This document shows positions 1,671-20,703 of a stretch of DNA of 27,738 nt, in pieces (within the stretch, counting starts at the first letter, position 1; each line of letters begins with the position of its first letter). The position numbers and the translations under genes are program-made. The notes under the pieces are model-generated. The model did no database searches. It had not been told where the DNA came from and saw only the letters and a program-made list of their open reading frames with translations. The stretch covers positions 1-27,738 of the forward strand of contig NIVC01002840.1 of NCBI GenBank assembly GCA_002269645.1, written 5' to 3'. Source of the DNA: Macrostomum lignano. Lineage: Eukaryota.

Positions 1671-3347
1671 ACTGGTAATAAAGTTGGGCTCAGGCGAATA
1701 GCCTATTTGGCCAAAAAAGTCAATGTTTAATAATTAATTTAATAATAATTCGAAAAGGAGCTATATAGGGCTATATAGGGTACTTTTACATGATAAATAC
1801 GATTTTTAGCTCGTCACTATTGTACATGTATGAGTGACTTTTAATTTATGGCCGCAGGCCGGGGAGCATTACGCTCATAATACCGCAGTACTTTAATTAT
1901 TTTATGAAGGATCAAAGAGAAAGAAATTCGCAAGGGGATACCGTTTTAGCTTTGCATAAAAAAGAAATGTGTGGAGGGACAATACATATAAATGCGGAAA
2001 GGAGTTTTTAATATAACCGTAAGGTCATCATACTCATGTTTGCATACATTTACAGTACAATTAGCGCATTTAATGCAGAAAGAGACCATCTAATTTACAG
2101 TCGAAACAAGCTTTTAACCAGCATAAGCGTAACTTTTACAATGATCCGATCGTATTAAAATTCAAGTGGGTCAGTTTCATGCCACGCGTAATTCATGTAC
2201 ATGTAGACTTATATAATACAATTTTCAAATGACTGAATTTAAAATAATAAATGAAACTAATGCGACCGAAGCTGTCGAAGTTAATGACCTCCACGCCATA
2301 AGTAGTGTAATTGTACCGTAAATGTTTTCGCTCTTGTATTGTAATTTTGTTAACGTCTTTGTTGTGGGATTTTAGAATAAAATATTTAGTATATAGGATG
2401 TTTAATCCTTATAGCATTGACAAATTTCTTAGCAACGACATATACATGTACATAGGAGTAGTACATGTACAGTGTACGTCACGGTCACGGGATATTTCTG
2501 CTGATCGAACGGTGCAAGTATTTAAAAAATCGATTGAGCCGTTTTTTCTGAAATCAATCAAAGACATGGATGGAAAAGAACAATTTTTGTACGGTGCAAG
2601 CATCCGGTACGATCGAACATTCCCGCGAATCCCTAATATTAGCAAATTTCGCAGGTCACTTATCAATTAACTTGCTGAGTCAAGTGGTCCGGAGCGAGGT
2701 TAAGTCAAACTTTCTCCAGGAATTAAAAATAACTATGCAATTTATTGAACCATATAGGTTACTAATTGACACAAAGGTTAATTGCATTCGGTTGAGTAAA
2801 CAGATAAAAAAATTTGCCAATCCTACTTCCCTAACCCTTCACAGGCATGAGCTAGCTAGGTTGGCGGCTGCAATTGTCCATGGCCAGAAAAATAATTCAC
2901 GTATCGCTGATGTAGGTGCGAGGTGAGAATGCCCGAGCACTGACTCAATTAATTCCAGTATTAAAAAATATTGTACACGCAATTTCAACATGCTGATGCA
3001 GATGCAGATGAAGTCAACAACAGATAGGCCAGAATATTCATTAGCTAATCATTAACGCAGCCACCAGGTCTTGCCGTCTATGTATGCAGGCAAATATATA
3101 TTTTATGGTAAACGAATTCTCATGGGCAAAAACAAAAACTTTATGTAAGAATTCCTAATGTCAAGTTTGATGTGCTCTGATACAATAAAACGGTGTTATT
3201 TTCTTGGTTTTAGAGAATAGAGGACAAAGAGTTGAAGATAGTTGATGTTTGCACGCTCCTATTCTCAAAATTTAGCATTTAACACGAATGACCAAAGCCT
3301 CAAAACAGCAGAAAAATGGCGATTTCTTGTTAATTGTAGTCTCAAAG

Positions 3348-4470
3348 TCAGCGCAGAAGGCCGAAGAAGCTGCGGAGCTCAGCTTCCGTCATCGTGTCGT
3401 TCATGATGGCCACCGCCTGCACCGTGCCCTTCAGCATTCGCAGGTCGCCAGGTCGAAATCCCAAGCGGATGCAGTTGCATGTCGACACGGCAGAGTTACG
3501 CTGAGAACCAGTGTTCACAGCAGACCGCGGCACGAACCCGGAGTTAGAGAAGAAGTCGCGGCTTGACGGAGACGCAGAAGTAACGCCGACCTCAACGAAT
3601 CCATTCGGGTCAAACGAGTTCGTGGCAGAAGGCGTGAAGTACTCAAAGTAAGATAAAGCCACCCTAAAGAAGTACAGGCCCCATCTGCCAGTCCAGCCGT
3701 CCCAAAACGCCGCGCCCCGATCCCCTGGGGAGTCGCAGTTGTAGGATTCGAGCAGCGGTGCCTCCACTCGGACAGTGCGCTTGAGCCTGACCAACCACGT
3801 GAGTCCCTGCTGCACGCTCGCGAACTCCACGTTCTCCAGCCACATCTTGGACGACACTCCGTCGAGCTTGGCTCCCTCGCTGCTCCACTCCACATTCTCC
3901 GACATCCACTGCTGCGTCTGGCCGCACACCAAGTTGCTCCTGCTGGCGTCCGCATCGTCGCTCATCACCCAGACGGCCCTCAGCTTCGAGCCCACACCCA
4001 GCATGAGTTTCCTGCTCAAGGTGAGGAACTTGGCGGCTCTGTCATCGGCGAATGCAGCACAGCGGCGAGACTGCGAGCTCTCTGCAGCAGCGAGTCCATC
4101 GATGAGGTGGCATACTGCGGTGTACTGGAAGAGCGAGCACTGGCGAGTGTTCGAGTCGAACTGGGCCACCAGCAGTTTGCTCGAGGCGCCGTAATCGAGG
4201 CACTCGATGATGCCTCTCTGAATCTGGGTCGCCCGCACTGCCAGATTCTCAGGCAGGCACTGCGGGCTACTCAGACGGTGCCAGAGGCCCGGCGGGCTTC
4301 CGGAATGGACCAGCTGGGCCAGGCTTAGAAGTGAAAACAGCAGAATCGGACCTGAAAGTCATGAAAAGGAACAACACAGAACTGGTTTGGCTGCAAGCCT
4401 CCTACGATGAAGTGTTTCCATTCGACAAGATCTTACCGAATAGTCTTCGCTCCGAGATTCGAGGCGACAT
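3348..4470 (-). CDS. Secreted protein with PAN/apple-like N-terminal module and LamG/concanavalin A-like jelly-roll domain, copy 1 (2 exons: 4470-4437, 4351-3348; 345 aa)
   Basis: Exon 1 is MSPRISERRLF-G with donor G|GTAAGA at 4436. The acceptor TTTCAG| precedes 4351 and the phase-1 junction restores the frame. Hydrophobic leader PILLFSLLSLAQLVHS; Cys-spaced module (ECLDY...F...QCSLF); C-terminal LKGTVQAVAIMNDTMTEAEL resembles the LamG_3 end motif G.i.ev.iyn.als..ei. The domain names are by motif resemblance only. Confidence 0.7.
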
Positions 4471-4570: not shown

Positions 4571-4650
4571 CAAGGACCACTAGAAGTTACCGTTGTATCA
4601 GGACGCAACACTCGTAAATATTGCAAAATTATTTGAAGGCCCGCTTGTTT
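4571..4650 (+). repeat. P-element left terminal inverted repeat (80 bp)
   Basis: Reverse complement of 10993-11072 with a single mismatch (ATTGCAAAATT vs ATTGTAAAATT). Confidence 0.96.
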
Positions 4651-6376
4651 GCATTGCAGCTTAACTTTAAATGCTCATAACTCCGGACTGGTTGCACTTT
4701 GAAAGATAATTTTTTCGCCAGGTTGCTCGAAATTTTGTTCTCTTAAACATATAACAAACTTTAGCGCTATATCTACATGTAGGAGCGGCGGGCGTACAGT
4801 AAAGTAACGGCAATACACAATATTTCATTGCATACAAAATGAATAAAGTTTCAGTTACTTCAATTATTGCCTCCTAGTCTCGATAAAGTAGCAGACCATA
4901 CAACATACTCTGTAGTTGGAAGCTTTATAAAGCGGATAATCTGTACAGAGTTCAGTGGGCTGCAAAGGCGTCACTTCACTATCAAAAACCAGTATTATAA
5001 AAATCAGAAAGGCGCAGTATTTTTTAAATCTTGGCACACCTGCCCAACAAGAACTCCAACATTCATAATCTTTCTTTTGCTGTTCAAATGAACAGTAGGA
5101 GTCAAATAAAACTTGTACAGTAGCACAACTTTATTTGTATTTAAGTTCAATTTCGATATAAAAACCTCTAATTTCATAAAGAATACATGCGAAATAAGAA
5201 AACAAAGTCAAAAAGCAACAATAAGCCAATGTATTTTAAACTTAAACTTTCATACCAATCAAGTCATTCTGTCTAAAAAATCTCTTAAAATCACAAAGCA
5301 TAATGAATCACAGTACTTCACCATGTTAGCTCAGCAGACATTGATGGATGAACATCTAGATTGGATGATTTGGCACACCTGAAATGAAACCAATTTGGGA
5401 TTAATAAATACCTGCTTTGCAATGAACAACAAAACAAGCCTTGTTTTGAGTAAATGAATACATTTTCTCTATAACCTAATATGTATGAAACAAAGCTTAA
5501 ACCATCAAATCACAGCTGGTTTAACTAACATGAAACTGACAAACTAACAAATTAAAGTACATTGAATATGGATATAAAGGTAATGATAATAAGAAACTGT
5601 AGTTAAACTAAACAAACATCTCAACCGTCAATCTGCAACATTTGTAAACAATATGGTTCATAAAATAATTGTAATGACAAGACTAACAACCTACTTATTG
5701 CACTGATGAAAAACAAGATAAGGTTTACAATCTTGTATAAAGATAGTTAGAACAATAGCTTTAGATAAGTCTATAAATGGTATACATCCGGCTATACAGA
5801 ATTGTCTTAGGCCTAATAAATAAGGAAAGAGAATTATACACATTTAGACTTCAAAGTATATTCAATTGTGAATTTATATACTCTAATATATTGCTGTATT
5901 GACAACAAAAAACTATAACAAACTATAAGCCATGTTGCTAGGAATGCTAGTTAAACAAACAAATAAATCTTACACATTGTTTACACATTGTCTATAACAC
6001 TGTGTAAAACTATATTTGTCTTTAGACTAAAATGTTTTTTTCCTATTTGTCATTCTAATGTATAGTAAAAAATAGTACTCCTTTACCCTTGACTTCAGTT
6101 TTGAACATATAACTTCAGCTTAGTGAAATGATATAATTAATCTAATCCAAATCAAATCTAATCTAATTCTATAATTCTATTCAGTATAGCAAAAATGAGT
6201 GTCTTGTTCTAAAGTGGTATTGGTAAATGATTTACTTAAACAGCATAGCTCAACCAATTTTGAAGCATTTAACTTCACTTAGCTATAAAATCAACAATCA
6301 GGTAACTAGAATACAAAAAAATAATCAACAGACTTATTAATGACTTTTAAAAACAATTTTTGCATGTAAAGGGTAA

Positions 6377-6695
6377 TAGATGCCTACAAAATTATAAACA
6401 AAACTGTACATTTGACAAAACTGTCAACAATTTTCTAACAAACAGTAGAATGTTAGCCTGTAAGTAATTAAATAGATGCCTACAAAAATATGAACAAAAC
6501 TGTACATTTGACAAAACTGTCAACAACTTTCTAACAAACAGTAGAATGTTAGCCTGTAAGTAATTAAATAGATGCCTACAAAAATATGAACAAAACTGTA
6601 CATTTGACAAAACTGTCAACAACTTTCTAACAAACAGTAGAATGTTATCCTGTAAGTAATTAAATAGATGCCTCCAAAAATATGAACAAAACTGT
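6377..6695. repeat. 96-bp tandem repeat, ~3.3 copies, inside the P element
   Basis: TAGATGCC unit starts recur at 6377, 6473, 6569 and 6665. Confidence 0.93.
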
Positions 6696-6870
6696 TCAAA
6701 CTTTTTAATAGACTCAACTAACTTAAGCAAACTTAAATTGATACAAAAGCTTGCAATAAATTATAGCTATCCCCAAAGTATATAAAAAATTCATGGGCTT
6801 CAAGAAATACATCTGAGTATGCCAGCAATTGGTCAACTAGCCAGAGTGTGATAATAAAGAATGTAGCAAA

Positions 6871-9797
6871 TCATTCATGTTGTAGTTTACGTAGTCTACG
6901 TCCATTGGCATTGAAAGTATGCCGAGGTATCTCTGATGACTTACGCACTAGGCCTTTGAAAAAAGTATTTGCAAGCCGGCGAGCAATAGATGATAGTTGA
7001 TCCTTTTGAATATCAAAGTCAACAAGTGACTCAAAAGTATATAGAAAAAGGCGAATTGTATGGCTGGCACACTTCAGTGACATCATACCAAAGAGTGAGT
7101 AGCACATTGATGCATAGACAATTAGCCATTCAGGAGGATGTTGCAATTTTCCTCTAGATAAAAGGTTAGTAAACTCACTATCTGGTGCCTGTACAGTTTG
7201 AGCAGGAAATACTTCAGGCACTTCTAAGGACTCCTTCATTGAAATATAGCCGCAGATATAATACAGAGTTACTCTTTCATCCAGTGATACCTCTTCAATT
7301 TGGCCTGGCAAATTATCAATTAACTCAATCTCTTCAAATGACATTGTGCCAGTACAACAGCTGTCTTGTGCTTGGCAGTTCATAGATGGTGCATCAATTT
7401 GCAGGTCTGCATACAGTTGCATTCTTCGTAGGCGGGCTGAGAGCATTATCTGCTCAACTGATATATAATAGCAGCCCCCATGTCCTTGTCTGTAAATAGA
7501 AAATTCTCCTTCAAGTCTGTCTGATTGAAGCTCACCTAGAGAATGTGTATAAATAAAAATTAAATGACTCACTTACTTTGAAAAGGTACTTTTATCTAAA
7601 TCAACTTTCACTACTTACTGGTATACACTTATTCTTACCTAATAACACATAGGAAAATTTACAGTCTTTTAGTAAATATCTGCTCAGTTCAACCAGCCCT
7701 TTTGATGTCTGTATAGCAGCCTTGCGAGTTTCCGAAGTAAGCGATCGTAAACGTCCAGGTCCTCGACCTCCAGGCATCCGTTCTAATACTTCGGCAAACA
7801 TACTTAGTAACTTAAGATTGCTTGACTCTTCAGAGAAAATTGGACTACGTGTATCATCATGCAGCTGCATATGAGATGTTGTTGATTTTACATTAACCAC
7901 TTTCCAAAACTTAAGGATAAAATCTATAAAAGTGGCTGTACCATAAAACCCATGAAGTTGAAGAGCAGCAATTGTCTTTTCATTAAAAACTTGAAGAACT
8001 AAAGATACCTTCTGACGTTCCAATGGAGATGGATGGCATGATTGTGGACTAAGTGTTATAGGTTGAACAACATGAAGCTGTGATTTCTGCTCAATATCTA
8101 TAATATCATTCCAATTAGCTTGACAAATAGGCCCTTCTGGTAAAAGTTGAAAGTCAATAATCTTTGAGCCTTGAGTATACCAATTATTGCGAATGTTTTT
8201 CAATAGATGAACTGTGTCATATAATAGAAACAAAGGTAGGCTTTGATCTACTGGGTTAATTGCCTTCCAGGGTGCATCCATGTTGTCAAACTGAAACTTC
8301 TGGTAGCAGATACGGTTGATGAAATGATTGTCACAAATAAGACTTACAACCTGCCCATTGCATTGATGAATAACCCTAATTAGTTTTACAATTTGTTGGA
8401 ACAAGAAGTTGGGTTTTAAACTATAAACAGGAATCAGCCTAGCCACAAATGATTGGGCTCCATGAATGGTTTTATCATTAAGGCTAGGATAGTACGAGCC
8501 AATTGTGTTGGTACATCCTCAGCATAGCCAACTGTATGTCCACCTCGGAAACGAGCTGATGGTAAAACGTATACTTCATCAAAAATAACAGTACACAACT
8601 TCTGTGACGGAGTCAGTTGGCCAAAATGTGTGCTCACAATGGTCTTACAATCTAAGTCTGTTCCAACATTACCAAGACCACCAAGATGACGCTTTAGAGT
8701 TGTAGCATGCGGTAGAGTCATAAGGTGCCTTGCTGACCGATAAGCATTAGTGCCAGATAGGAAGATCTTCATGGCTGTTAAAATGTCTGATGAATTATAA
8801 TAGTGCCCATTTGATGATAAGGACAATTCCAGTTGACGAAGAAGAAACAGTTGCTTGGAGCTACATGGTAACTTTCGAATGGTTGCCACACTAGACTTGA
8901 TCTCATCACTAATTGTCAATGGGGCCTGTTTGACCCTATTGACAATAGCTTCAAGTTGACTAAAGCGTTCTAGTTTCCATTGAAATCCTAGGAGGTCAGT
9001 TACCTTGACAACACTGTTCTGTCGATAGGCTTCAACAGTGAAGTCACTATTAACACAGATATAGAATTCAACTGCACGTTCAAATATGGTCAAGAACAAA
9101 ACATTCGAATCCGAAACTTGCACAAGCCAGCCAACTAAGAAGGGAAGAGCTAAAGCAGCAACTTGGAAAGCATTCCACGAACAGATTCAATCGGCTTTGT
9201 TAAATGCAGGCATTTGATCTGGTTCTTGACCACGCTGTGACAGGGAAATGCCTCTTTTAACAGCCTGCCTTGACTTCTCTAAAAATATTTTTGAATTACA
9301 AACAACAACACATTATAAAAGGCAATCCAACTTTACCTGAGCTATAGGTTATATAACATGCTATATGATAGGGCATATTGTTAACTTACTTGGATATGTT
9401 TGGCGCATATCACTTTTCTTAGCAAATTGAAAAATAGAAGGTGGGTCCCTAGGTCTTGTGAACCGCTTGACTTTTACCATGGGGGCATCATCTTCCCAAT
9501 GCTTTCGGCAAATGCCCATGAACTTAGAGACATTCTACAATTTATATATAAACTTTAGAAAGTTAATTATTTTTACTATACATTTTAATTATTCAAAAAT
9601 TATATTGATCTCAATTATTTACTTTTAAAGAATAAAGTAACTCATTAAAAGGTCATTTTATTCACCTTAATAGACGATGGCAATGCATTAATCCATCGGC
9701 AATGCTCAGCCTCATCTTTAGGAAAGCCAAATATAGCTACCTTCTCTTCATTGCGATAGTTACTTCTACAAGATGGTATGCAACATTTCATGGGCAT
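6871..9797 (-). CDS. THAP-domain P-element transposase, 4 exons (9797-9666, 9534-9390, 9278-7639, 7535-6871); one in-frame stop (9189-9187) and one 1-nt frameshift (~8460)
   Basis: The C2CH THAP domain is split by intron 1 (MKCCIPSC...FGFP...W | ...ICRKHW...PPSIF). P-type catalytic motifs: IFDEVYV, LICDN, YDTVHLLKNIRNNW (DxxH) and GELQSDRLEGEFSIYRQGHGG. All three introns are GT-AG with consistent phases (0,1,1). Confidence 0.92.
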
Positions 9798-10992
9798 GGT
9801 TTGATAATTTTTTGTGAGTACACTGAAATTGTTAGATTTATAAACCAAAAAATTGAAACATTTCAGTTATCTCACTTTACATTTTAAAATATTAGACCCA
9901 AAACATAAACTATGAAAAAACAAATGAAAGCCAAAAAGGGTTTTAATAAGTGAATAACTGTGTATTATATTAATGCACAGATTTGAAAGTGAACACAAAC
10001 TGGTAATAAAAGAAAAACAAATAAAAAAGTAGCAGAAATATTTTTTCTTCTAAAAAAACACCAATATTAATAAATAAAGGCCTTTTAAAAAATTGTACCT
10101 AACACAATTGAAAAGCTGCTATTTGACATTAAAAATAGGTGCTGCAAATGTCTTCAAGACAGTAATACATTACAATATTATTACACTGATAAAAATTGGA
10201 AAAAATAGTGTTTTCAACACAAAAATAAATAGGCCTAAAGAAATTGAAAAGCCAGTATAATAAACTTTAGCCTTGTTGTTTCTAGTGGGAAACCAACTTT
10301 TAATATGCTAAAATATGTCTGCTACAAAAGGACAAAAGAATAAAAAGCATAGGTTAGTCAGCTAAAGCAACATCTTATTGGTTGGATACATTAAAAACAA
10401 ATAAACTATCATTTAACTTGTCTGATACTAACATCAAGCATGAGTACATGAATTAGTCCTAGTCTTCAGTAATAATAATAATAGGCCTAGGCCTAATAAT
10501 AATATTAATAATAATAATAACTAGGCCTAATAATCATGGTAGGCCTAGGCATAGGCCTAGTAGCTGTTGGAGTTTCAGTATGATAGGCCTAATGTCATAT
10601 GATAGCCTGTCATAGCTAGCTAAAGTGTAAAGGCTAAGCTTATAAGTTATAAAATAATATAGACCTACTGGTTAAATTACTTTCTGGTTGATAGTAAGTT
10701 AGTTAGAAGCCCTTCTGATCCTTTGACCTTTTCTCAAGCTTTGTTGAATTCTCAGTACTATGACTAGCAGTATCTGCTGTCTGCATAAAACCTTAGGGGG
10801 CCTAGGAAATATTAAAACGAGTTGCATTTAATGATATAATTACTCAAAATATCTAGATTACAGCCTAAATAAACTATAAATACACATATTATATGAAGCT
10901 TCTGAGGCTCAAATGTAGTGTATGCTTCTTTAAAACAGTCGACTTAAGTCGAGTAGATGCTTTTTTGAAGGCAAGTACCGATAAATACACGT

Positions 10993-11072
10993 AAACAAGC
11001 GGGCCTTCAAATAATTTTACAATATTTACGAGTGTTGCGTCCTGATACAACGGTAACTTCTAGTGGTCCTTG
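10993..11072 (-). repeat. P-element right terminal inverted repeat (80 bp)
   Basis: Reverse complement of 4571-4650, followed immediately by TSD ATTCTAGG. Confidence 0.96.
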
Positions 11073-13058: not shown

Positions 13059-13090
13059 GTTGAATTGCACGGACCGAGCTGCTTGCTGAG

Positions 13091-14197
13091 TCAAAGGACC
13101 AGACCAAAGAAGCTGCGAATCTCAGCCTCCGTCATCGTGTCGTTCATGATGGCCACCGCCTGCACCGTGCCCTTCAGCATTCGCGGTCGCCAGGTCGAAA
13201 TCCCAAGCGGATGCAGCGGCATGTCGACACGGCAGAGTTACGCTGAGGACCAGTGTTCACAGCAGACCGCGGCACGAACCCGGAGTTGGAGAAGAAGTCG
13301 CGGCCTGACGGAGACGCCGAGGTGACGCCGACCTCAACGAATCCATTCGGGTCAAACGAGTTCGTGGCAGAAGGTGTGAAGTACTCAAAGTAAGATGAAG
13401 CCACCCTGAAGAAGTACAGGCCCCATCCGCCAGTCCAGCCGTCCCAAAACGCCGCGCCCCGATCCCCCGTGGAGTTGCAGTTGTAGGATTCGAGCAGCGT
13501 TGCCTCCACTCGGGCATCCCGCTTGAGCCTGACCAGCCACGTGAGTCCCTGCTGCACGCTCGCGAGCTCCACGTTCTCCAGCCACATCTTGGACGACACT
13601 CCGTCGAGTTTGGCTCCCTCGCTGCTCCACTCCACATTCTCCGACATCCACTGCTGCGTCTGGCCGCACACCAAGTTGCTCCTGCTGGCGTCCGCATCGT
13701 CGCTCATCACCCAGGCGGCCCTCAGCTTCGAGCCCACACCCAGCATGAGTTTCCTGCTCAAGGTGAGGAACTTGGCGGCTCTGGCATTGGCAAATGCGGC
13801 ACAGCGGCGGGACTGCGAGCTCTCTGCAGCAGCGAGTCCATCGATGAGGTGGCACACTGCGGTGTATTGGAAGAGCGAGCACTGGCGAGTGTCCGAGTCG
13901 AACTGGGCAACCAGCAGTTTGCTCGAGGCGCCGTAATCGAGGCACTCGATGATGCCTCTCTGAATCTGGGTCGCCCGCACTGCTGGATTCTCAGGCAGGC
14001 ACTGCGGGCTGCTCAGACGATGCCACATTTCAGCAGATATATCGCAGCAGCTCAGATGAATACAGAGAAACAGAACAAGCAGCGAACTACCTGAAGTACA
14101 CAGTGACATTGGTAGGTTTTTATCTTCAGGAAGTGCAATAATTAGTAAGTCTTACCGATGCTCAGAGTGCTGAAAAACTCCTGAAATTGAGCTGCAT
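13091..14197 (-). CDS. Secreted PAN-like/LamG-like protein, copy 2 (exon 2 14090-13091 with 1-nt deletion at ~13185; putative exon 1 14197-14156)
   Basis: About 15 differences from copy 1 over 265 aligned residues. Same phase-1 acceptor (TTCAG|GT) before a hydrophobic leader. CATTCGCGGT vs CATTCGCAGGT in copy 1 causes the premature end at 13174; restoring the base gives ...TEAEIRSFFGLVL* at 13091. Putative exon 1 (donor G|GTAAGA at 14155) also needs one extra base in a 5-nt homopolymer. Confidence 0.68.
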
Positions 14198-15288: not shown

Positions 15289-15590
15289 GGGGGTTGTAGC
15301 CTAGTGGTTAGAGCGTCGGACTCACGACTTGAAGGTCGGGGGTTCGATTCCCGATCCCACTAGAACAATTTGTGTCATGTGAGCAAGACACTTATCTCTC
15401 TCTGCATTGCTTCAGTTCACCCAGCTGTAAAATGGGTGCCAGCATTAGCTGAGGTAATTGAGGGTGTGGCGACCCCAGCAGTCCTTGGACTGAACAGCCG
15501 TACGCAGCTTTCAGATGCGCTGCGCAATAGCTGCGGCTGAGCTGTCGGTGCACATCTGGCCCTAATGGGACAGGTGTAATCAATTGAAAC
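15289..15590 (+). mobile_element. tRNA-derived SINE with CORE-like central domain (3' end approximate)
   Basis: tRNA-like head 15290-15359 with A box TAGCCTAGTGG and B box GGTTCGATTCCC but an imperfect anticodon stem. It is followed by TGTGTCATGTGAGCAAGACACTTATCTCTCTCTG...CTTCAGTTCACCCAGCTGTAAAATGGG, which resembles the CORE consensus TGTGTGACCTTGGGCAAGTCACTTAACCTCTCTG...CCTCAGTTTCCTCATCTGTAAAATGGG. Confidence 0.8.
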
Positions 15591-15675: not shown

Positions 15676-15800
15676 TTAGGGTGACCGCATTAAGCTGAAG
15701 AAGCGGCTGATCTCAGCCTCCGTCATCGCGTCGTTGATGATGGCCACCGCTTGCACTGTGTCCTTGAGCATTCGCGGATGCAGCCGCATACAGCGAGTCA
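15676..15800 (-). pseudogene. 3' fragment of a third PAN/LamG-like gene copy
   Basis: Encodes RMLKDTVQAVAIINDAMTEAEISRFFSLMRSP*, homologous to the C-terminus of copy 1. TGCATCCG is joined directly to CGAATG, deleting the LGFRPGDL segment. No upstream homology is seen. Confidence 0.8.
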
Positions 15801-16253
15801 TAAGAAGCTTCTGACTCACCCTAAAATGTCTAATAATATCCTCCATGGAGAAAATCGAAATGCAATTAACACCTGTAAGCACCACAGAAATCTCTTCAGG
15901 GGGCCTTTCTTCTCCCAAGAGTCTGCAGAAAGCCCAAAATAGAAATTCAGAGCTCTAAACTCATTTGATTGAAATCTATCGATTGCTAAGCTGGCTGCCA
16001 ATAACCCTGACAAGAGTGGAGCCGATTCCCCAACCTGCACTCTTTGAGCACAGGAAGAGTTTCATTGCTGGGCCTGGGAAGGCTTTTCCTGGGCAGGCGA
16101 TGCAACACAGAGAAATAAAAATTGTTTGCAAGTCAGCAATAAAACTGCAGAGTTTAAATGAGGGCTGATTGCTAGTCATAAAAACTATTCTTTGATCAAG
16201 GAGGCCGACAACTGGAGTCCGTAGCGCCAAAGCATTCCCTAACCCTCAAATTC

Positions 16254-16716
16254 TGGTGCTAAAGCCCCTTGGTGCTAAAGCCCCTTGGTGCTAAAGCCCC
16301 TTGGTGCTAAAGCCCCTTGGTGCTAAAGCCCCTTGGTGCTAAAGCCCCTTGGTGCTAAAGCCCCTTGGTGCTAAAGCCCCTTGGTGCTAAAGCCCCTTGG
16401 TGCTAAAGCCCCTTGGTGCTAAAGCCCCTTGGTGCTAAAGCCCCTTGGTGCTAAAGCCCCTTGGTGCTAAAGCCCCTTGGTGCTAAAGCCCCTTGGTGCT
16501 AAAGCCCCTTGGTGCTAAAGCCCCTTGGTGCTAAAGCCCCTTGGTGCTAAAGCCCCTTGGTGCTAAAGCCCCTTGGTGCTAAAGCCCCTTGGTGCTAAAG
16601 CCCCTTGGTGCTAAAGCCCCTTGGTGCTAAAGCCCCTTGGTGCTAAAGCCCCTTGGTGCTAAAGCCCCTTGGTGCTAAAGCCCCTTGGTGCTAAAGCCCC
16701 TTGGTGCTAAAGCCCT
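16254..16716. repeat. 16-bp minisatellite (GGTGCTAAAGCCCCTT), ~29 identical copies
   Basis: Perfect head-to-tail units with no spacers. Confidence 0.97.
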
Positions 16717-17589
16717 AAGTTCTGGCGTACTGCAGTTTAGTGATAACAAGTTATCAAAAAAATTTTGTCAAATATACTTTTTGAGCTTGTGGTAAAGCTG
16801 AAAAATCTCCGAATCTGGTTTATAATACTTTTTTGATGCCTGGCTAAAATCTTTATAAATTTTACTTTGCAATATTCTGTGGAAACCTGCTCATTTCCGA
16901 TCGCATATTTAGAATCGTATGACTCTCAGTCCAGACTCTCGCTCCAGGCGTCCTTGGCTTTGATAAAGCGTCACTTGGCATTCAGCAATAAAAGCAATTG
17001 CTGGCGCGCTGCAGCTGGGTGTGCCGGATCCCGCCCTGGCATTCCTCCCAGCTACTGGGGTCTCTCAGCTACCAGCCGTTCTCCCCCGCTCCTTTCTTTC
17101 TGCTATTTGCTCAGCGCCCAGCGGTGTCGGGAGTTCCTACTGAAACCCGGCGGGTCCGGCAGCAGAAACAGAATTCTCTCCCTCCCCCCGCGTCTCCCTA
17201 TCTGCCTCACTCGTCTCGATCTCGGCTCTCTTATCCGACGACTATTGAGGGGGGAGGGACCGTTTCTATGGCAACTGGGCGAAGCGAGAACACCGGGCAG
17301 GTGAAGAGGGAGAGCCGCTGAGATAGGCAGGGGTGGCCTGGGCCTGGCATATTCTCTCTTTCGCTTTTGTTTCCTCGGCGGTGGCGCCAATCAAGCCGCA
17401 GCTGCAGCTCAGCTCACTCAGTTCTCACCGGAGGGGTCGCGGAGGGAGGGGGAGGCGGGCCTGCGAGCAACAGCTCCCCCCTGCCCCTGCAGCTTACTTG
17501 ATCGGCATTCCACAGCTGACCGAAATTTCCTGCCGCGCCAGGTTGCTCACCTCGCCAGCCGAGTCCGAAACTCAGGATCGCACCACGCC

Positions 17590-18189
17590 ATGAGCTCAGC
17601 CACCAAGCAGCATCAGCAGCAGCACCAGTCCGCGGCCAAGTCGGCAGCAAAGGCTTCTCACAAGACACCGGAGGATGCGGCCTCAACGTCTGCAGCCGCC
17701 GCCGCTGCTACTGCGTCCTCGGCGGCGCCTTCGCCTGCGAAGCAGCCGAGCCTCGCCACGCTGATGATGCTGAAGCGGCGCATCGGCGACCTGCGCGCCC
17801 GGCACCGCCGGAACCGGCCGGTGCGCCGGCAGGAGAACAGCTACCGGCTGGGCCCGGAGCCAGCCGCCAGGTACCCGGCCGCCGAGGTGCGCCGCATCGC
17901 CGAGAACAGCCTGAAGTTCTTCCTGGCCGAGTCGCGCTACGACGCCAAGGCGACGCCCAAGCTGGCCAAGATGGTCACCGAGGACGTGAAGCGCCGAATG
18001 AAGAACAACTTCAGCTGCCCGCGCTACAAGATCGTTGTCATGGTGACGGTGACGCAGCGAGCGCAGCAGCACCTCATGATGGCGTCGAGAACTGCGGGCG
18101 ACTCGGAGCTGGACGACTTCGTCACCTGCACGCTGGAGAGGCCGAGCTTTCTGGCCTCGGCGGCAGTGTTCTGGTTCTACTGCGAGTGA
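17590..18189 (+). CDS. Tctex-1 domain dynein light chain (TCTEX1D1/DYNLT5-like), intronless, 199 aa
   Basis: Low-complexity Ala/Ser N-terminus, then ENSYRLGP...EVRRIAENSL...Y....LAKMVTEDVKRRMK...PRYKIVVMVTV.Q...Q.LMMASR...D...D.F......SFLASAAVFWFYCE, the Tctex-1 family pattern. Confidence 0.88.
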   Translation: MSSATKQHQQQHQSAAKSAAKASHKTPEDAASTSAAAAAATASSAAPSPAKQPSLATLMMLKRRIGDLRARHRRNRPVRRQENSYRLGPEPAARYPAAEVRRIAENSLKFFLAESRYDAKATPKLAKMVTEDVKRRMKNNFSCPRYKIVVMVTVTQRAQQHLMMASRTAGDSELDDFVTCTLERPSFLASAAVFWFYCE

Positions 18190-18209: not shown

Positions 18210-18480
18210 AGTAGTATATAAAAAGACGCTTCTAGACCCAGAGCACTTTTTTAATGACCGTTTTAAGGGTCTAGAGGGGGGACACGGGGGGTAAATAAAA
18301 AAACACATCTAAACACCATTAATACATCTAATCACCCATAATCACCCCTAACAATAAAAATCACTTCCAAACACTTCCAAACACTCCCCAACACCCCCCT
18401 CGCGTCCCCCCTCTTAAGACCTTACAAACGGCCATTAAAATAAGGTCTGATCTAGAGGCGTCTTTTTATATACTACTACT
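18210..18480. repeat. Terminal fold-back: imperfect inverted arms 18210-18292 and 18393-18480 around a C/A-rich spacer
   Basis: AGTAGTATATAAAAAGACGC at 18210 is repeated exactly in inverted orientation (ending at 18477, with one extra AGT unit to 18480). Similarity continues with mismatches for ~83 bp. The spacer has short repeats TAATCACCC x2 and CACTTCCAAA x2. Confidence 0.9.
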
Positions 18481-18534
18481 CTATAACCCCTTGCCCGCGC
18501 CGCAGGCGCGAAGGGTCTTTTTCTGTTACTAAAA

Positions 18535-18849
18535 ATGACCCGAGTTTACACCTTTTCTGTTAGTGATACTTTTGAGACTGTTGCTAAAAATGCAGAGATA
18601 ATAAAACAACATATTTTGAATGGAATAATTGATGAAGTTTATTTAAAATATGACGACAAGCACGACCTAAAACTTTATCCATTAGAGCTAGATGAGATGT
18701 ATGATTTAGAACAAGAGGGTGAGTTAATATTTCAACTTGGAGATTATTTAAATTCGGATGATTGGGAGGTTAGATCAACAGATTCCGAATCAACAAATAG
18801 TTCATATGAAACCAGTGATTCAGAGAATGAAAGTGAAATTTTTATGTGA
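18535..18849 (+). CDS. Polinton hypothetical acidic protein, 104 aa
   Basis: AAAA-ATG context as in the other viral genes; Asp/Glu/Ser-rich; no recognised domain. Confidence 0.65.
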   Translation: MTRVYTFSVSDTFETVAKNAEIIKQHILNGIIDEVYLKYDDKHDLKLYPLELDEMYDLEQEGELIFQLGDYLNSDDWEVRSTDSESTNSSYETSDSENESEIFM

Positions 18850-18865
18850 AAAAAATATTTAAAAA

Positions 18866-19090
18866 ATGAACTATTATTCTATAACAGAAACGACATTTAT
18901 TGTGAAAAATATATATAAAAAAATGAAGGTAAACTATTCCTACATCGGAAATGTTCCAATTAATGAACTTAATGAAAATTTAAGTTTGATAACAGTTGAA
19001 CAAATGTCAATAATAATATTAGTAACAATTATTGTAATAATATTGTTTTTGTTTGTTATAAAAAATTTACTACCATGTTGTCTTAAGTAA
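18866..19090 (+). CDS. Small single-pass membrane protein, 74 aa
   Basis: AAAA-ATG context; C-terminal hydrophobic run SIIILVTIIVIILFLFVI followed by KNLLPCCLK*. Confidence 0.55.
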   Translation: MNYYSITETTFIVKNIYKKMKVNYSYIGNVPINELNENLSLITVEQMSIIILVTIIVIILFLFVIKNLLPCCLK

Positions 19091-19100
19091 CTGATCGAAC

Positions 19101-20703
19101 TTAGTTTGCAGATAATATCTGATTCTCATAAAAAGAACCCAATATTTCTTCACCGTCCTTATCAGCAATTATATAGGTTGTAGGATTGGTATTTAAAACT
19201 TTACTGATAGTAAATTTCTCACTTATCTTCCAATATCCTTTTCTTCCTTTTTCAAACTTATCTTTCCATTTATAGATATAAACAGAATCACCAACTTTAA
19301 AATCTTTAGTTTTCTTTTTTTCAAATTTTCCAAAAGTAACCCTAACATTTTCAGGATTGTTATAAGCTTGTTGAGGAGTCATCTTTATAGCTGAATGATA
19401 TGAATTGTTATAATCTTTCACTACGTCTGGTAATATTTTTACCCATTTTTGGTTACCATTAAGACTAAACTGAAACCATAATTTCTTACCTAAAGTTCTA
19501 TTAAATCTTTCTATTAATGCGTTTTTACTCTCTCCATAAATAGAATAAATTTTATTAATATACTCCCCATTCGCGTCCTTTTTCCTTTCTTGTCCTTTTT
19601 CAAAATGATATAATTTATACATATGAGGATTGTAAAATTCTTTTCCTTCGTCAACACACAAACGTTCGCTTTTTTCTCCAAGACTTCTAAAAGCAGCAGC
19701 AACATCCTCTCCTTTTTTGGATTTCAAAGGAACAGCCCACGCGTATCGAGTAAAACCATCTAATATGGTTAAGATATATTTATATCCTCTTTCGTTCGGC
19801 ATAGACATTAAATCAGCATACCAAATTTCGTTCTTTTTGAAGTTCATGATTTTTCTATAAAATTTAGGTTTTCGATATTCTTTATGAAGAATCTTTGCCT
19901 CATCAGAACTTAACCCACCGCCACTTAACAACAAACACTCAACACAATTATTTCCATGTTGATTATAATTAATTCCCAAACCAAATTTAACTTTAGACTG
20001 CAAAATCTTTTTAACCATCCACCTAGTTAATCTCTGACCTACTGATAATCCCTGCAAGTTATCTAATCCTTGAATCATTTTTTGATCGGCTTCATGTTTT
20101 AATCTTAATGCTTCCTCGGGTGAGTTCTTATCAGCATCTCTGTATGCTAAGTCATGATAGTATGCTAACCAATCAATACCGTTAATGGGAATTGAATCGG
20201 CTTTTGGAGTATTATCAGGATTTAATCGGAGATCGAGTCGAGTCAACCCGGCCTTTATACCTTTGCTTTCACAAAGGAGTAGACTGTGTCTTAAGCTATC
20301 ATAAGGATTGACTAAGTCCTTCAAGCCCACCAGCGTACAGTCGTTGCATCTCAACCATACTCAAGTCATATGAGGTTAGGTTTTCGATTCACTCTTGCCC
20401 ATATATTTATCTTCAAGCTTGTTACCGTTGGGAAGAGGAGTTACCTCTGTTCCTTTGTAATCTTTCGAAAACAAAGTGGTACTTGAAGCTTTAGGGGATT
20501 GAGTGAGCGGCTGGTGTTGCCACTAATAGTGACTAGCAGTAGCTTTGCATCTACCACTCGGGCACAGCTCGAGCTCCACCCGCGAAGTTGTAAGATGGGA
20601 TGTGTAATTCATTTGTATACCTTCCAGTAGTAAAGATTGGTGGTAAGATTGTTAATCCTTTTTGAACATCTAACAATCCTCCTTCAAACACTATTTGGCT
20701 CAT
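19101..20703 (-). CDS. Parvovirus-type phospholipase A2 (PLA2X) - retroviral-type (rve) integrase fusion, split by a group I intron (exon 1 20703-20578; exon 2 ~20252-19101)
   Basis: Exon 1 MSQIVF...ELHIPSYNFAG gives the first half of the PLA2 Ca2+ loop. Exon 2 gives TRLDLRLNPDNTPK..S.PINGIDWLAYYHDLAY...ADQKM...KVKFGLG (HD catalytic dyad). The frame continues without a stop into integrase: WYADL (D), LCVDEGKEFYN (D), NALIERFNRTL (E) and the C-terminal FKVGDSV...GSFYENQI. Confidence 0.88.
20253..20577 (-). ncRNA. Group I self-splicing intron, IC1-like, ~325 nt, no internal ORF
   Basis: Manual fold. P1: exon CGGGU with IGS GCCCG (20563-20559), U.G at the splice site. P2 and P2.1 hairpins. P3: CACCAGC (20516-20510)/GCUGGUG (20334-20328). 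P4: UCACUC/GAGUGA. P5abc with GAAA L5b. Receptor-like CCUAA/UAUGG in P6. P7: A-C(bulge)-GACUG (20344-20338)/CAGUCU (20286-20281). J8/7 AAGACA. P9: CCUUUGU-GAAA-GCAAAGG. Ends in G. Confidence 0.9.

What the first reader, a model, noticed from the sequence alone, without database searches (positions are those of the whole stretch)
20253..20577. Group I self-splicing intron inside a protein gene of an animal-integrated Polinton
Seen: a ~325-nt insert splits the PLA2 motif ELHIPSYNFAG | ...TRLDLRL. It folds by eye into a full IC1-like core: P1 with U.G, P2, P2.1, 7-bp P3, 6-bp P4, P5abc (A-rich bulge, GAAA L5b, P5c), a CCUAA/UAUGG receptor-like motif in P6, J8/7 AAGACA, P8, a GAAA-capped P9 and a terminal G. 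P7 shows the expected G-binding-site covariation (A-U pair with bulged C, CGA triplet). Known: nuclear IC1 introns occur in rDNA of fungi and protists; group I introns also occur in phages and some algal viruses; in animals they are known from mitochondria of early-branching lineages. Inference: a ribozyme in an mRNA gene in animal nuclear DNA, carried by a virus-like element, probably acquired from a protist or fungal source or a co-infecting large DNA virus. I know of no description of this arrangement, but could not check the literature.
Basis: partly seen in the sequence, partly recalled or inferred. Interest (0 to 1): 0.96.

Follow-up and report, generated by a model that had tools for sequence, protein, structure and literature searches.

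The report
Self-splicing intron in a virus-like element's integrase
A 325-base ribozyme intron of the group I kind interrupts the integrase gene of a Polinton-like viral element that lies next to a flatworm-like animal gene, with a phage-type cutting enzyme gene just upstream; such introns were so far reported only in related elements of protists.

Summary
On the minus strand, 20577..20253 matches Rfam RF00028 over the whole model (42.9 bits, E 1.3e-9). That is below Rfam's cut-off of 50, and the hit appears only when under 1 kb is scanned. A hand model gives P1-P10 with 99/99 standard pairs, three GNRA loops, a receptor-like motif in P6, the G-site pair in P7 and a terminal G. The two flanking exons align head to tail onto continuous sequence of relatives up to 71% identical, so intron-less alleles exist.

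The gene is not a plain PLA2 gene. It is a parvovirus-type PLA2 domain fused to an rve integrase.

New: the ORF immediately upstream, overlapping the gene's start, is a phage-type HNH endonuclease. An ORF-less intron beside a free-standing endonuclease is the "collaborative homing" layout known from phages.

The host is probably an animal. The adjacent Tctex gene is closest to Macrostomum lignano (41% identity, single exon, same GC3 bias). This is not proven.

The novelty is smaller than claimed: RF00028 introns were reported in 2025 in polinton-like viruses of protists.

DNA of relatives was not fetched because of the bars, so covariation and the intron/HNH distribution remain untested.

The parts
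20253..20577 (-). Group I intron, 325 nt, with no ORF of its own. The 5' end is G 20577 and the terminal (omega) G is 20253. GC is 0.44 against 0.32-0.37 in the exons.
   Evidence: RF00028 42.9 bits, E 1.3e-9, full model; hand model 99/99 standard pairs; MFE fold recovers most helices.
20559..20582 (-). P1 hairpin. The last five exon bases (20582-20578) pair with the internal guide (20563-20559), with U.G at the 5' splice site. A 4-pair extension and a UCGA loop follow.
   Evidence: Read from sequence and checked by script.
20281..20344 (-). Catalytic core: P7 (20344-20337 with 20287-20281; G-C guanosine-site pair preceded by a bulged C), the P3 3' strand, P8 and J8/7.
   Evidence: Best-conserved block in the cmscan alignment; pairs checked.
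20395..20506 (-). P4-P5-P5abc domain: P4, P5, P5a with an A-rich bulge (20422-20418), P5b with a GAAA loop (20466-20463), P5c.
20348..20388 (-). P6 with a tetraloop-receptor-like motif (CCUAAC 20380-20375 / UAUGG 20359-20355). It matches 10 of the 11 positions of the classical receptor.
   Evidence: comparison with the classical 11-nt receptor is from my own knowledge.
20578..20703 (-). Exon 1 of the PLA2-integrase gene (42 aa, ATG 20703). If unspliced, the frame stops 8 codons into the intron.
   Evidence: 67-69% identical to the N-termini of P0001/P0273.
19101..20252 (-). Exon 2 (383 aa plus stop): the rest of the PLA2-like domain (HD motif), the rve integrase core with D, D, E residues, and a chromo/SH3-like tail.
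   Evidence: PF00665 E 9e-8 and PF08398 16.6 bits for profile positions 21-68 only; 128 homologues.
20684..21301 (-). Free-standing HNH-type endonuclease gene (205 aa from the first ATG). Its end overlaps the start of the intron-bearing gene by 20 nt.
   Evidence: phrog_1035 'endonuclease VII' E 8e-12, phrog_2255 'HNH endonuclease' 3e-8, and two more endonuclease families. Full-length tblastn hits in 38 phage records, best E 1e-13. CxxC..CxxC, HxDH, N and DN..K are conserved in the alignment with two annotated phage proteins.
23540..24335 (+). A32-like packaging ATPase gene, broken: it reads in two frames (one frame change; no stop counted).
   Evidence: Pox_A32 PF04665 matched in two parts, profile 10-58 and 96-170, both below Pfam's cut-off; weak terminase hit.
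25815..27407 (+). Fibre-like protein: 19-aa tandem repeats followed by an F5/8 type C (discoidin) domain.
   Evidence: PF00754 E 8e-12; 57-nt repeats; PHROG tail and tail-fibre families.
18210..27738 (.). AT-rich virus-like element (GC about 0.28-0.39; GC3 of its genes 0.15-0.25). It runs off the right end of the window. Its left boundary lies somewhere between 18190 and 18535.
17590..18189 (+). Neighbouring host gene: single-exon Tctex-1/DYNLT2B-like protein, GC 0.65, GC3 0.88.
   Evidence: PF03645 E 1.5e-17. Best of 1.84 billion representatives is Macrostomum lignano PAA70432.1, 41% over 162 aa. That gene is also single-exon and GC-rich.

Best explanation
An ORF-less group I ribozyme intron of Tetrahymena-like (IC1-like) build sits in phase 0 inside the calcium-loop codons of the PLA2-like domain. 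That domain heads the rve integrase of a Polinton/polinton-like viral element. The element lies beside a flatworm-like host gene.

How it would work (inferred from the anatomy, not observed):
- The minus strand is transcribed. Unspliced message would stop 8 codons into the insert.
- The RNA folds. P1 presents the U.G pair at 20578. A free guanosine bound at the G-C pair of P7 attacks there.
- The terminal G (20253) then takes that site and the exons are joined. This gives one open frame of 425 codons for a PLA2-integrase.
- The resulting loop is one residue longer than in all relatives.

The gene directly upstream encodes a phage-type HNH endonuclease. I propose that it and the intron form a collaborative-homing pair: the enzyme cuts intron-less copies of the integrase gene in co-replicating elements, and repair copies in the intron, with or without the enzyme gene.

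My estimates for the separate claims: group I intron 0.93; animal host 0.75; still splices with these bounds 0.55; HNH is its mobility partner 0.45. The confidence given for this explanation (0.6) is for the core claim: a true group I intron in the PLA2-integrase gene of a Polinton-like element in animal DNA.
For: - Intron: full-length RF00028 match, E 1.3e-9, with negative controls.
- Structure: 99/99 standard pairs over P1-P10 and all expected loops and junctions; MFE agreement.
- Exons: they flank continuous sequence in relatives such as P0001, P0273, P0275, P0004, P0005 and others. In relatives PF08398 spans the junction, while exon 2 alone holds only profile positions 21-68.
- Need for splicing: the unspliced frame is closed.
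- HNH. The intron site is only 126 nt into the next gene.
- Same site in relatives: P0003 and P0022, from different clusters, begin with the same 13 unrelated residues and then continue exactly from the junction. P0043 does the same with 4 residues. Their close kin P0275 and P0004 are continuous. This fits an insert at the same site in some relatives.
- Host.
- Collaborative homing as a known pathway: PMC3984707 and PMC11296320.
Against: - The score is under Rfam's gathering cut-off (42.9 against 50), and there is only one sequence, so no covariation.
- With the terminal G at 20253 the loop is one residue longer than in every relative. With the neighbouring G (20252) as terminal G the exons are out of frame, and the gene would then count one frameshift. 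P10 is only 2 pairs.
- The copy is not pristine: the ATPase gene has one frame change.
- No expression data.
- The target of the HNH enzyme is unknown. Free-standing HNH genes are common in such elements without any intron (PMC12220804). Pfam, NCBIfam and PDB sequence searches did not recognise the ORF.
- The host call rests on one gene at 41% identity.
Confidence: 0.6

Rival explanations
1. Relic. It is a true group I intron, but in a dead, silent copy. The element is decaying, the gene is no longer expressed or no longer gives a working integrase, and the open frame under one splice model is a leftover.
For: The ATPase gene of the same copy has one frame change. The junction differs in length from all relatives, and the alternative terminal G puts the exons out of frame. 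The element's composition is far from the host's and there are no expression data.
Against: There is no mismatch in any of the 99 modelled pairs. Exon 2 is open over 383 codons with the D, D, E and HD motifs in place. The HNH ORF is full length against its phage homologues. The unameliorated GC3 of 0.15-0.25 against 0.88 in the host gene points to a recent arrival.
Confidence: 0.25
2. Not an animal element. The contig is chimeric, a contaminant, or from a non-animal host. The intron would then be one more case of the group I introns already reported in polinton-like viruses of protists.
For: The relatives of the integrase come almost only from metagenome assemblies (ENA, JGI, Logan) with no organism names. 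Discoidin fibre proteins and RF00028 introns are reported for PLVs of the rhizarian Paulinella micropora (PMC12220804). The host evidence is a single gene. Tctex-2B-like proteins also occur in protists; one jakobid is among the top hits.
Against: The host gene and the element are contiguous in one window. The best hit of an exhaustive search is a flatworm protein, with E 2e-17 against 2e-12 for the next. The similarity extends outside the domain, the gene has the same single-exon build and the same extreme GC3, and 99 nt are 73% identical at DNA level. The other named top hits are molluscs, an annelid and a hemichordate.
Confidence: 0.2
3. The insert is a spliceosomal GT-AG intron or another insertion, and its likeness to group I introns is chance.
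For: In-frame GT-AG pairs exist around the insert, for example exon 1 ending at 20580 with exon 2 starting at 20260.
Against: The E-value of 1.3e-9 over the whole covariance model and the complete set of group I helices and tertiary motifs. Every GT-AG pairing adds two or more residues beyond the group I model, moving further from the relatives.
Confidence: 0.03

Closest known systems
Group I introns (RF00028) in polinton-like viruses integrated in protist genomes (Paulinella micropora, Rhodomonas lacustris, Desmodesmus armatus; PMC12220804, 2025)
   Same: The same RNA family in the same broad class of virus-like element, integrated in a nuclear genome. The size is similar (309-376 bp reported there). 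Free-standing HNH and GIY-YIG endonuclease genes and discoidin fibre proteins are also described in those elements.
   Different: The hosts there are protists; here the neighbouring gene is animal-like. In R. lacustris the intron lies in a roughly 50-aa gene upstream of the capsid gene; here it lies in the PLA2 domain of the integrase. Those introns passed a routine Rfam scan, whereas this one is below the cut-off. No intron/endonuclease pairing was described there. I could not compare sequences.
Tetrahymena-type (IC1) nuclear rDNA group I introns
   Same: P2/P2.1, P5abc with an A-rich bulge, a GAAA L5b facing a receptor motif in P6, a GNRA L9, a bulged nucleotide before the G-C guanosine site in P7, U.G at the 5' splice site and a terminal G (the comparison is from my own knowledge).
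   Different: This one sits in a protein-coding gene, not in rDNA. It has no P9.1/P9.2, and the receptor differs at one of 11 positions. Subgroup membership was not tested with subgroup models.
Collaborative (trans) homing in phages: an ORF-less intron plus an adjacent free-standing endonuclease, e.g. cyanophage psbA (PMC3984707; PMC11296320)
   Same: [quoted passage not shown]
   Different: A eukaryotic virus-like element, not a phage. That the enzyme cuts the intron insertion site is not shown.
Group I introns in protein genes of large DNA viruses (chloroviruses, mimivirus relatives; e.g. the RNA polymerase gene of an integrated giant virus, PMC10675990)
   Same: A self-splicing intron in an mRNA gene of a eukaryotic DNA virus.
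   Different: Those viruses are giant, often with intron-encoded endonucleases, and have protist or algal hosts.
PLA2X of adintoviruses and PLA2 genes of Polintons (PMC8502044; PMC3671162)
   Same: A parvovirus VP1-type PLA2 domain in an animal Polinton-like virus.
   Different: There the domain is a separate virion protein with a pX-like tail. Here, and in 37 of the 120 listed relatives, it is fused to the N-terminus of the integrase.

Membership tests
Group I intron (Rfam RF00028) | Significant match to the family covariance model | tested here: inconclusive
   42.9 bits over model positions 1-253/253, E 1.3e-9, but below the curated gathering score of 50, and filtered out in larger scans. 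I read this as a true but divergent member. The large P5abc insert is unmodelled.
Group I intron (Rfam RF00028) | Core helices P3-P9 with the P3/P7 pseudoknot | tested here: met
   P3 7 pairs, P4 6, P5 5, P6 11, P7 7, P8 8, P9 7 pairs, all standard. This is a single sequence, so there is no covariation test.
Group I intron (Rfam RF00028) | U.G pair at the 5' splice site in P1, and a terminal G at the 3' end | tested here: met
   U 20578 pairs with G 20563 inside a 5-pair P1. G 20253 is followed by an in-frame exon. A second G (20252) is an out-of-frame alternative.
Group I intron (Rfam RF00028) | Guanosine-binding G-C pair in P7 with the adjacent bulge | tested here: met
   G-C at intron positions 236/296, preceded by bulged C 235 and the A-U pair 234/297.
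Group I intron (Rfam RF00028) | Guanosine-dependent self-splicing | not testable with these tools
   No expression or biochemical data are at hand.
Subgroup IC1 | P2 + P2.1, extended P5abc, L5b/P6 and L9/P5 contacts; match to a subgroup model | tested here: inconclusive
   The architecture is present by reading. No subgroup covariance models are in the tools.
Polinton / Maverick | Retroviral-type (rve) integrase | tested here: met
   PF00665 E 9e-8, at the cut-off. Relatives include chromodomain- and protease-fused Polinton-type integrases.
Polinton / Maverick | [quoted passage not shown] | tested here: inconclusive
   None in the 9.5 kb of the element held in the window. The element runs off the window.
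Polinton / Maverick | A32/FtsK-type packaging ATPase, protease, major and minor capsid proteins | tested here: inconclusive
   An ATPase is present but weak (PF04665 E 0.005 and 0.009) and broken once. The protease and capsid genes were not recognised in the window. The 250-aa ORF has no homologues.
Polinton / Maverick | Terminal inverted repeats and a 5-6 bp target duplication | not testable with these tools
   Only one end of the element is in the window.
Parvovirus-type PLA2 domain (PF08398) | Ca-loop (xGxG) and HD catalytic dyad; Pfam score above the cut-off | tested here: inconclusive
   Relatives score 33-44 bits against a cut-off of 23.9, across the junction. Exon 2 alone scores 16.6 bits over profile positions 21-68. 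The loop is split between the exons and the HD motif is present. The joined product was not searched (rule).
HNH (beta-beta-alpha-Me) endonuclease | HNH motif residues and zinc-binding cysteines; match to family profiles | tested here: met
   Four PHROG endonuclease families, E 8e-12 to 2e-6. Full-length phage homologues. Conserved CxxC..CxxC, HxDH, N and DN..K. Pfam HNH models gave no hit. The AF2 model was unusable.
Collaborative homing pair | ORF-less intron, an adjacent free-standing endonuclease gene, and intron-less alleles in the population | tested here: met
   and 13/40 (alleles seen at protein level only).
Collaborative homing pair | The endonuclease cuts the intron-less allele at the intron insertion site; intron and enzyme gene co-occur | not tested
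   This needs DNA of relatives.

The most novel reading that the evidence does not exclude
Polinton-like viruses of animals carry an active mobile cassette: a phage-type HNH endonuclease plus an ORF-less IC1-like group I intron. The cassette homes into the integrase gene. An animal nucleus would then hold, and on expression would process, an mRNA spliced by a ribozyme rather than by the spliceosome. These viruses would also be a route by which group I introns and homing endonucleases pass between protists and animals.
Probability: 0.3. Interest if true: 0.88.

Novelty: new variant of a known kind. Interest (0 to 1): 0.72.

Why it matters
In eukaryotic nuclei, group I introns are known almost only from rDNA of protists, fungi and algae. 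In animals they are known only from mitochondria of a few early-branching groups (PMC3984707, PMC5360047). In 2025 they were found in polinton-like viruses inside protist genomes.

This case extends that in three ways:
- The element sits in what looks like flatworm chromosomal DNA.
- The target is the integrase, a core gene of the element.
- The layout is intron plus neighbouring endonuclease, so far described for phages.

It makes testable whether Polinton-like viruses move ribozymes and homing endonucleases across eukaryotic supergroups, and whether an animal cell processes such an mRNA.

There is also a practical point. The intron is invisible to a routine Rfam scan, because it is below the cut-off and is filtered out above about 1 kb. 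Published counts are therefore likely to be too low.

Tried and rejected
Searches that gave nothing:
- Rfam at gathering threshold, and lax scans of 27.7 kb and 3.2 kb, show no group I hit. This is a filter effect, not absence.
- Lax scans of 21950-22800 and 25100-25900 for a second intron: none.
- The weak mir-1992 hit in exon 1 (E 0.04) and the MIR8643 hit on the foldback: taken as chance.
- The full-length Tctex ORF in the word-indexed protein search: no hit. This was my error: low-complexity N-terminus and the length window. The exhaustive search with the domain worked.
- The 250-aa ORF 22736-23488: no homologues.
- Intron against the phage collection with blastn: no match.
- HNH ORF against Pfam, NCBIfam and PDB sequences: nothing.
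- AlphaFold2 on the HNH ORF without an alignment gave pLDDT 46.6, so no fold search was run on it.
- The GC-rich repeated ORF against the PDB, and it and the ORFs of the 6.5-kb element against Pfam and PHROGs: nothing useful.
- The supplement of PMC12220804 held no intron table that I could search.

Ideas rejected:
- A protist (Paulinella) host was my working idea after the literature search. It was set back by the flatworm-like neighbour gene.
- The GT-AG model is less parsimonious than the group I model.

Steps left out on purpose:
- Joining the two exons for any search or fold. All searches were exon by exon, by reference.
- Any look-up, pattern scan or protein-guided scan that would fetch DNA of relatives of the element.

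Slips I have to declare:
- In my reasoning I worked out where a frame change would lie under the alternative 3' splice site, and how the odd N-terminus of one relative relates to its kin by frame.
Full report
**1. The observation**

- Exon 1: read on the minus strand, an ORF starts at ATG 20703 and runs 42 codons to GGU at 20580-20578.
- Insert: it begins at G 20577 and ends at G 20253.
- Exon 2: from 20252 a frame of 383 codons runs to the stop at 19103-19101.
- Unspliced frame: the exon 1 frame stops 8 codons into the insert.

Rfam evidence:
- A scan of 20100-20750 gives RF00028 (group I catalytic intron) on the minus strand at 20561..20260. It covers the whole model (1-253), at 42.9 bits and E 1.3e-9.
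- The score is under Rfam's gathering score of 50. The hit is absent from the gathering scan.
- It is filtered out when 3.2 kb or the whole window is scanned in the lax mode.
- Two other 0.8-kb stretches of the element, scanned in the same lax mode, gave no hit. They serve as negative controls.

**2. Anatomy of the RNA**

A hand model checked by script gives these parts:
- P1: five pairs between the last exon bases and the internal guide, with U.G at the splice site, plus a 4-pair extension.
- P2 with a GCAA loop, then P2.1.
- P3 (7 pairs), P4 (6 pairs) and P5.
- P5a with a 5-nt A-rich bulge on its 3' strand.
- P5b capped by GAAA, and P5c.
- P6 with CCUAAC/UAUGG, which matches 10 of the 11 positions of the classical tetraloop receptor. 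That comparison is from my own knowledge.
- P7: 7 pairs with a bulged C before the G-C pair that should bind guanosine.
- P8 and the J8/7 junction.
- P9 capped by GAAA.
- A 7-nt tail ending in G.

All 99 modelled pairs are standard pairs. The unsupervised minimum-energy fold finds P2, P2.1, P3, P4, P5, P5a, P5b, P5c and P9 by itself. The best-conserved stretches in the cmscan alignment are the P7 strands and J8/7.

The build is that of Tetrahymena-type IC1 introns. I could not test subgroup membership because no subgroup models are available. With a single sequence there is no covariation test.

**3. The gene**

The interrupted gene is not a stand-alone PLA2 gene.
- Exon 2 carries an rve integrase core (PF00665, E 9e-8). 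It also holds the second part of a parvovirus-type PLA2 domain (PF08398, profile positions 21-68, 16.6 bits, below the cut-off).
- Its 128 homologues include 37, among the 120 listed, that carry both domains.
- Aligned as two separate rows, exon 1 and exon 2 fall head to tail on continuous sequence of these relatives. P0001/P0273 are about 70% identical; P0275, P0004, P0005, P0007, P0011, P0012, P0025 and P0026 also show this.
- In the relatives PF08398 runs across the junction at 33-44 bits.

So intron-less alleles exist, and the insert lies in phase 0 inside the calcium-loop codons.

Two neighbouring G residues could be the terminal G:
- With 20253 the exons are in frame. The loop is then one residue longer than in every relative. 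Two P10 pairs can form.
- With 20252 the exons are out of frame, and the gene would count one frameshift.

In-frame GT-AG pairs also exist, but each adds two or more residues beyond the group I model.

All searches were exon by exon, by reference.

**4. Signs of the same insert in relatives (protein level only)**

- P0003 and P0022 belong to different clusters and come from different sources. Both begin with the same 13 unrelated residues and then continue exactly from the junction.
- P0043 does the same with 4 residues.
- Their close kin P0275 and P0004 are continuous.

This is what a gene caller would give if an insert sat at the same site. It can be checked only on the contig DNA, which I did not fetch (section 9).

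**5. The neighbour: an endonuclease**

The ORF just upstream on the same strand is 21301..20684, 205 aa from the first ATG. It overlaps the start of the integrase gene by 20 nt.
- It matches four PHROG endonuclease families: 'endonuclease VII' at E 8e-12, 'HNH endonuclease' at 3e-8, and two others.
- tblastn finds full-length homologues in 38 phage records, with best E 1e-13 and 26-34% identity in the records listed. They are annotated endonuclease VII or HNH endonuclease.
- In an alignment with two annotated phage proteins the two CxxC pairs, HxDH, the N and the DN..K are conserved. Lengths agree at 203-205 aa.
- Pfam, NCBIfam and PDB sequence searches were blind to it. A single-sequence AlphaFold model was unusable.

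An ORF-less intron beside a free-standing endonuclease, with intron-less alleles in the population, is the layout of collaborative (trans) homing described for phages (PMC3984707; PMC11296320). The intron site is 126 nt into the next gene. Whether this enzyme cuts that site is inference only.

**6. The element**

- From about 18.2-18.5 kb to the end of the window the DNA is AT-rich, with GC 0.28-0.39. The GC3 of its genes is 0.15-0.25.
- Besides the HNH and PLA2-integrase genes it holds an A32-like packaging ATPase at 23540-24335. The Pfam matches are weak, and the gene is broken by one frame change.
- It holds a 530-aa fibre-like protein with 19-aa repeats and a discoidin domain.
- It holds several ORFs without any hit.
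- The polymerase, protease, capsid genes and second terminus are not in the window. 'Polinton or polinton-like virus' is therefore as far as the evidence goes.

Breaks counted in the window part of the element: ATPase, one frameshift; integrase, none under the 20253 model and one frameshift under the 20252 model; HNH, none.

**7. The host**

Twenty bases before the AT-rich block ends a single-exon, GC-rich gene for a Tctex-1/DYNLT2B-like protein (GC 0.65, GC3 0.88; PF03645, E 1.5e-17).
- An exhaustive search of 1.84 billion representatives gives as best hit a Macrostomum lignano (flatworm) protein, at E 2e-17 against 2e-12 for the next.
- The similarity runs 162 residues at 41%, beyond the domain.
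- The flatworm gene is also single-exon and GC-rich, with GC3 0.80. The two genes share 73% identity over 99 nt of DNA.
- The other named hits are molluscs, an annelid, a hemichordate and one jakobid, at 30-36%.

I take the host for an animal, probably a flatworm not in the protein collections, with probability about 0.75. I therefore treated the element as a virus-like element of animals.

**8. What is known**

- In the library I found no report of a group I intron in an animal Polinton, Maverick or adintovirus.
- A 2025 paper reports RF00028 introns in polinton-like viruses integrated in protist genomes. The counts are Paulinella micropora 53, Rhodomonas lacustris 44 and Desmodesmus 2. In R. 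lacustris the intron sits in a roughly 50-aa gene upstream of the capsid gene. The same paper describes free-standing HNH and GIY-YIG genes and discoidin proteins in such elements (PMC12220804).
- PLA2 domains in Polintons and adintoviruses are known, as separate virion proteins (PMC3671162, PMC8502044).
[quoted passage not shown] Nuclear group I introns are typically in rDNA (PMC3984707).

The finding is therefore a new variant of a known kind, not a new kind. What is new is the probable animal host, the integrase as target, and the pairing with a neighbouring endonuclease.

**9. Limits, steps left out, and slips**

- I did not fetch contig DNA of the relatives. I also ran no pattern or protein-guided scans of the public viral, metagenome or genome collections for the intron or the element. 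I could not tell whether those relatives are viruses of animals, so the bar applies. These steps are listed as referred steps.
- As a result, covariation, the intron's kinship and the intron/HNH co-distribution are untested.
- The joined exons were never searched.
- One count in notebook entry 6 ('about 45' relatives with both domains) is wrong. The table gives 37.

**10. Verdict**

| Claim | Verdict |
|---|---|
| Observation | confirmed |
| Group I intron | 0.93 |
| Animal host | about 0.75 |
| Splicing-competent with the stated bounds | about 0.55 |
| HNH as mobility partner | about 0.45 |
| Interest | 0.72 |

Noticed in passing
window 19101-20703 (-), and relatives P0001-P0099: A parvovirus-type PLA2 domain fused to the N-terminus of an rve integrase is a whole family: 37 of the 120 listed relatives carry both Pfam domains. 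In the literature I read, the PLA2 of Polintons and adintoviruses is a separate virion protein. The fusion suggests that the integrase travels in the particle.
   Followed up: partly
window 25815-27407 (+): A 530-aa ORF with tandem 57-nt (19-aa) repeats at 25904-26416, followed by an F5/8 type C (discoidin) domain. It hits PHROG tail and tail-fibre families. It is probably the attachment fibre of the element.
   Followed up: partly
window 18210-18477: A 268-bp foldback with 27-nt terminal inverted repeats (96% complementary) and a long imperfect inner hairpin. It lies between the host gene's stop codon and the first AT-rich ORF. It may be the element's terminal structure or a separate small inverted-repeat element.
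   Followed up: partly
window 4571-11072: A 6.5-kb AT-rich block bounded by 80-nt inverted repeats (99% complementary), with three consecutive minus-strand ORFs (6871-9123) that hit no family. It is probably another DNA transposon of unknown type.
   Followed up: partly
window 3346-4238, 13089-14109, 15680-15775: A GC-rich ORF family in three copies (82-95% identical stretches). It has no Pfam or PDB hit and only one weak PHROG hit to a family of unknown function (E 0.004).
   Followed up: partly
window 15290-15359 (+): A tRNA-like sequence: Rfam tRNA 34.3 bits (above the cut-off) with a shortened T arm. ARAGORN does not call it. It may be a tRNA-derived repeat or a pseudogene.
   Followed up: no
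window 16142-16829 and 1288-1680: A perfect 16-nt tandem array of about 43 units, and a long (TAG)n tract.
   Followed up: no
window 20253-20577: Method point: the RF00028 hit appears only when less than about 1 kb is scanned with lax filters, and it is under the gathering score. Routine Rfam annotation of genomes would miss introns of this type.
   Followed up: yes
proteins P0003, P0022, P0043 (relatives): Their predicted N-termini start with unrelated residues (13, 13 and 4) and then continue exactly from the intron insertion site. Close kin are continuous. This may be the same insert at the same site in other lineages.
   Followed up: partly
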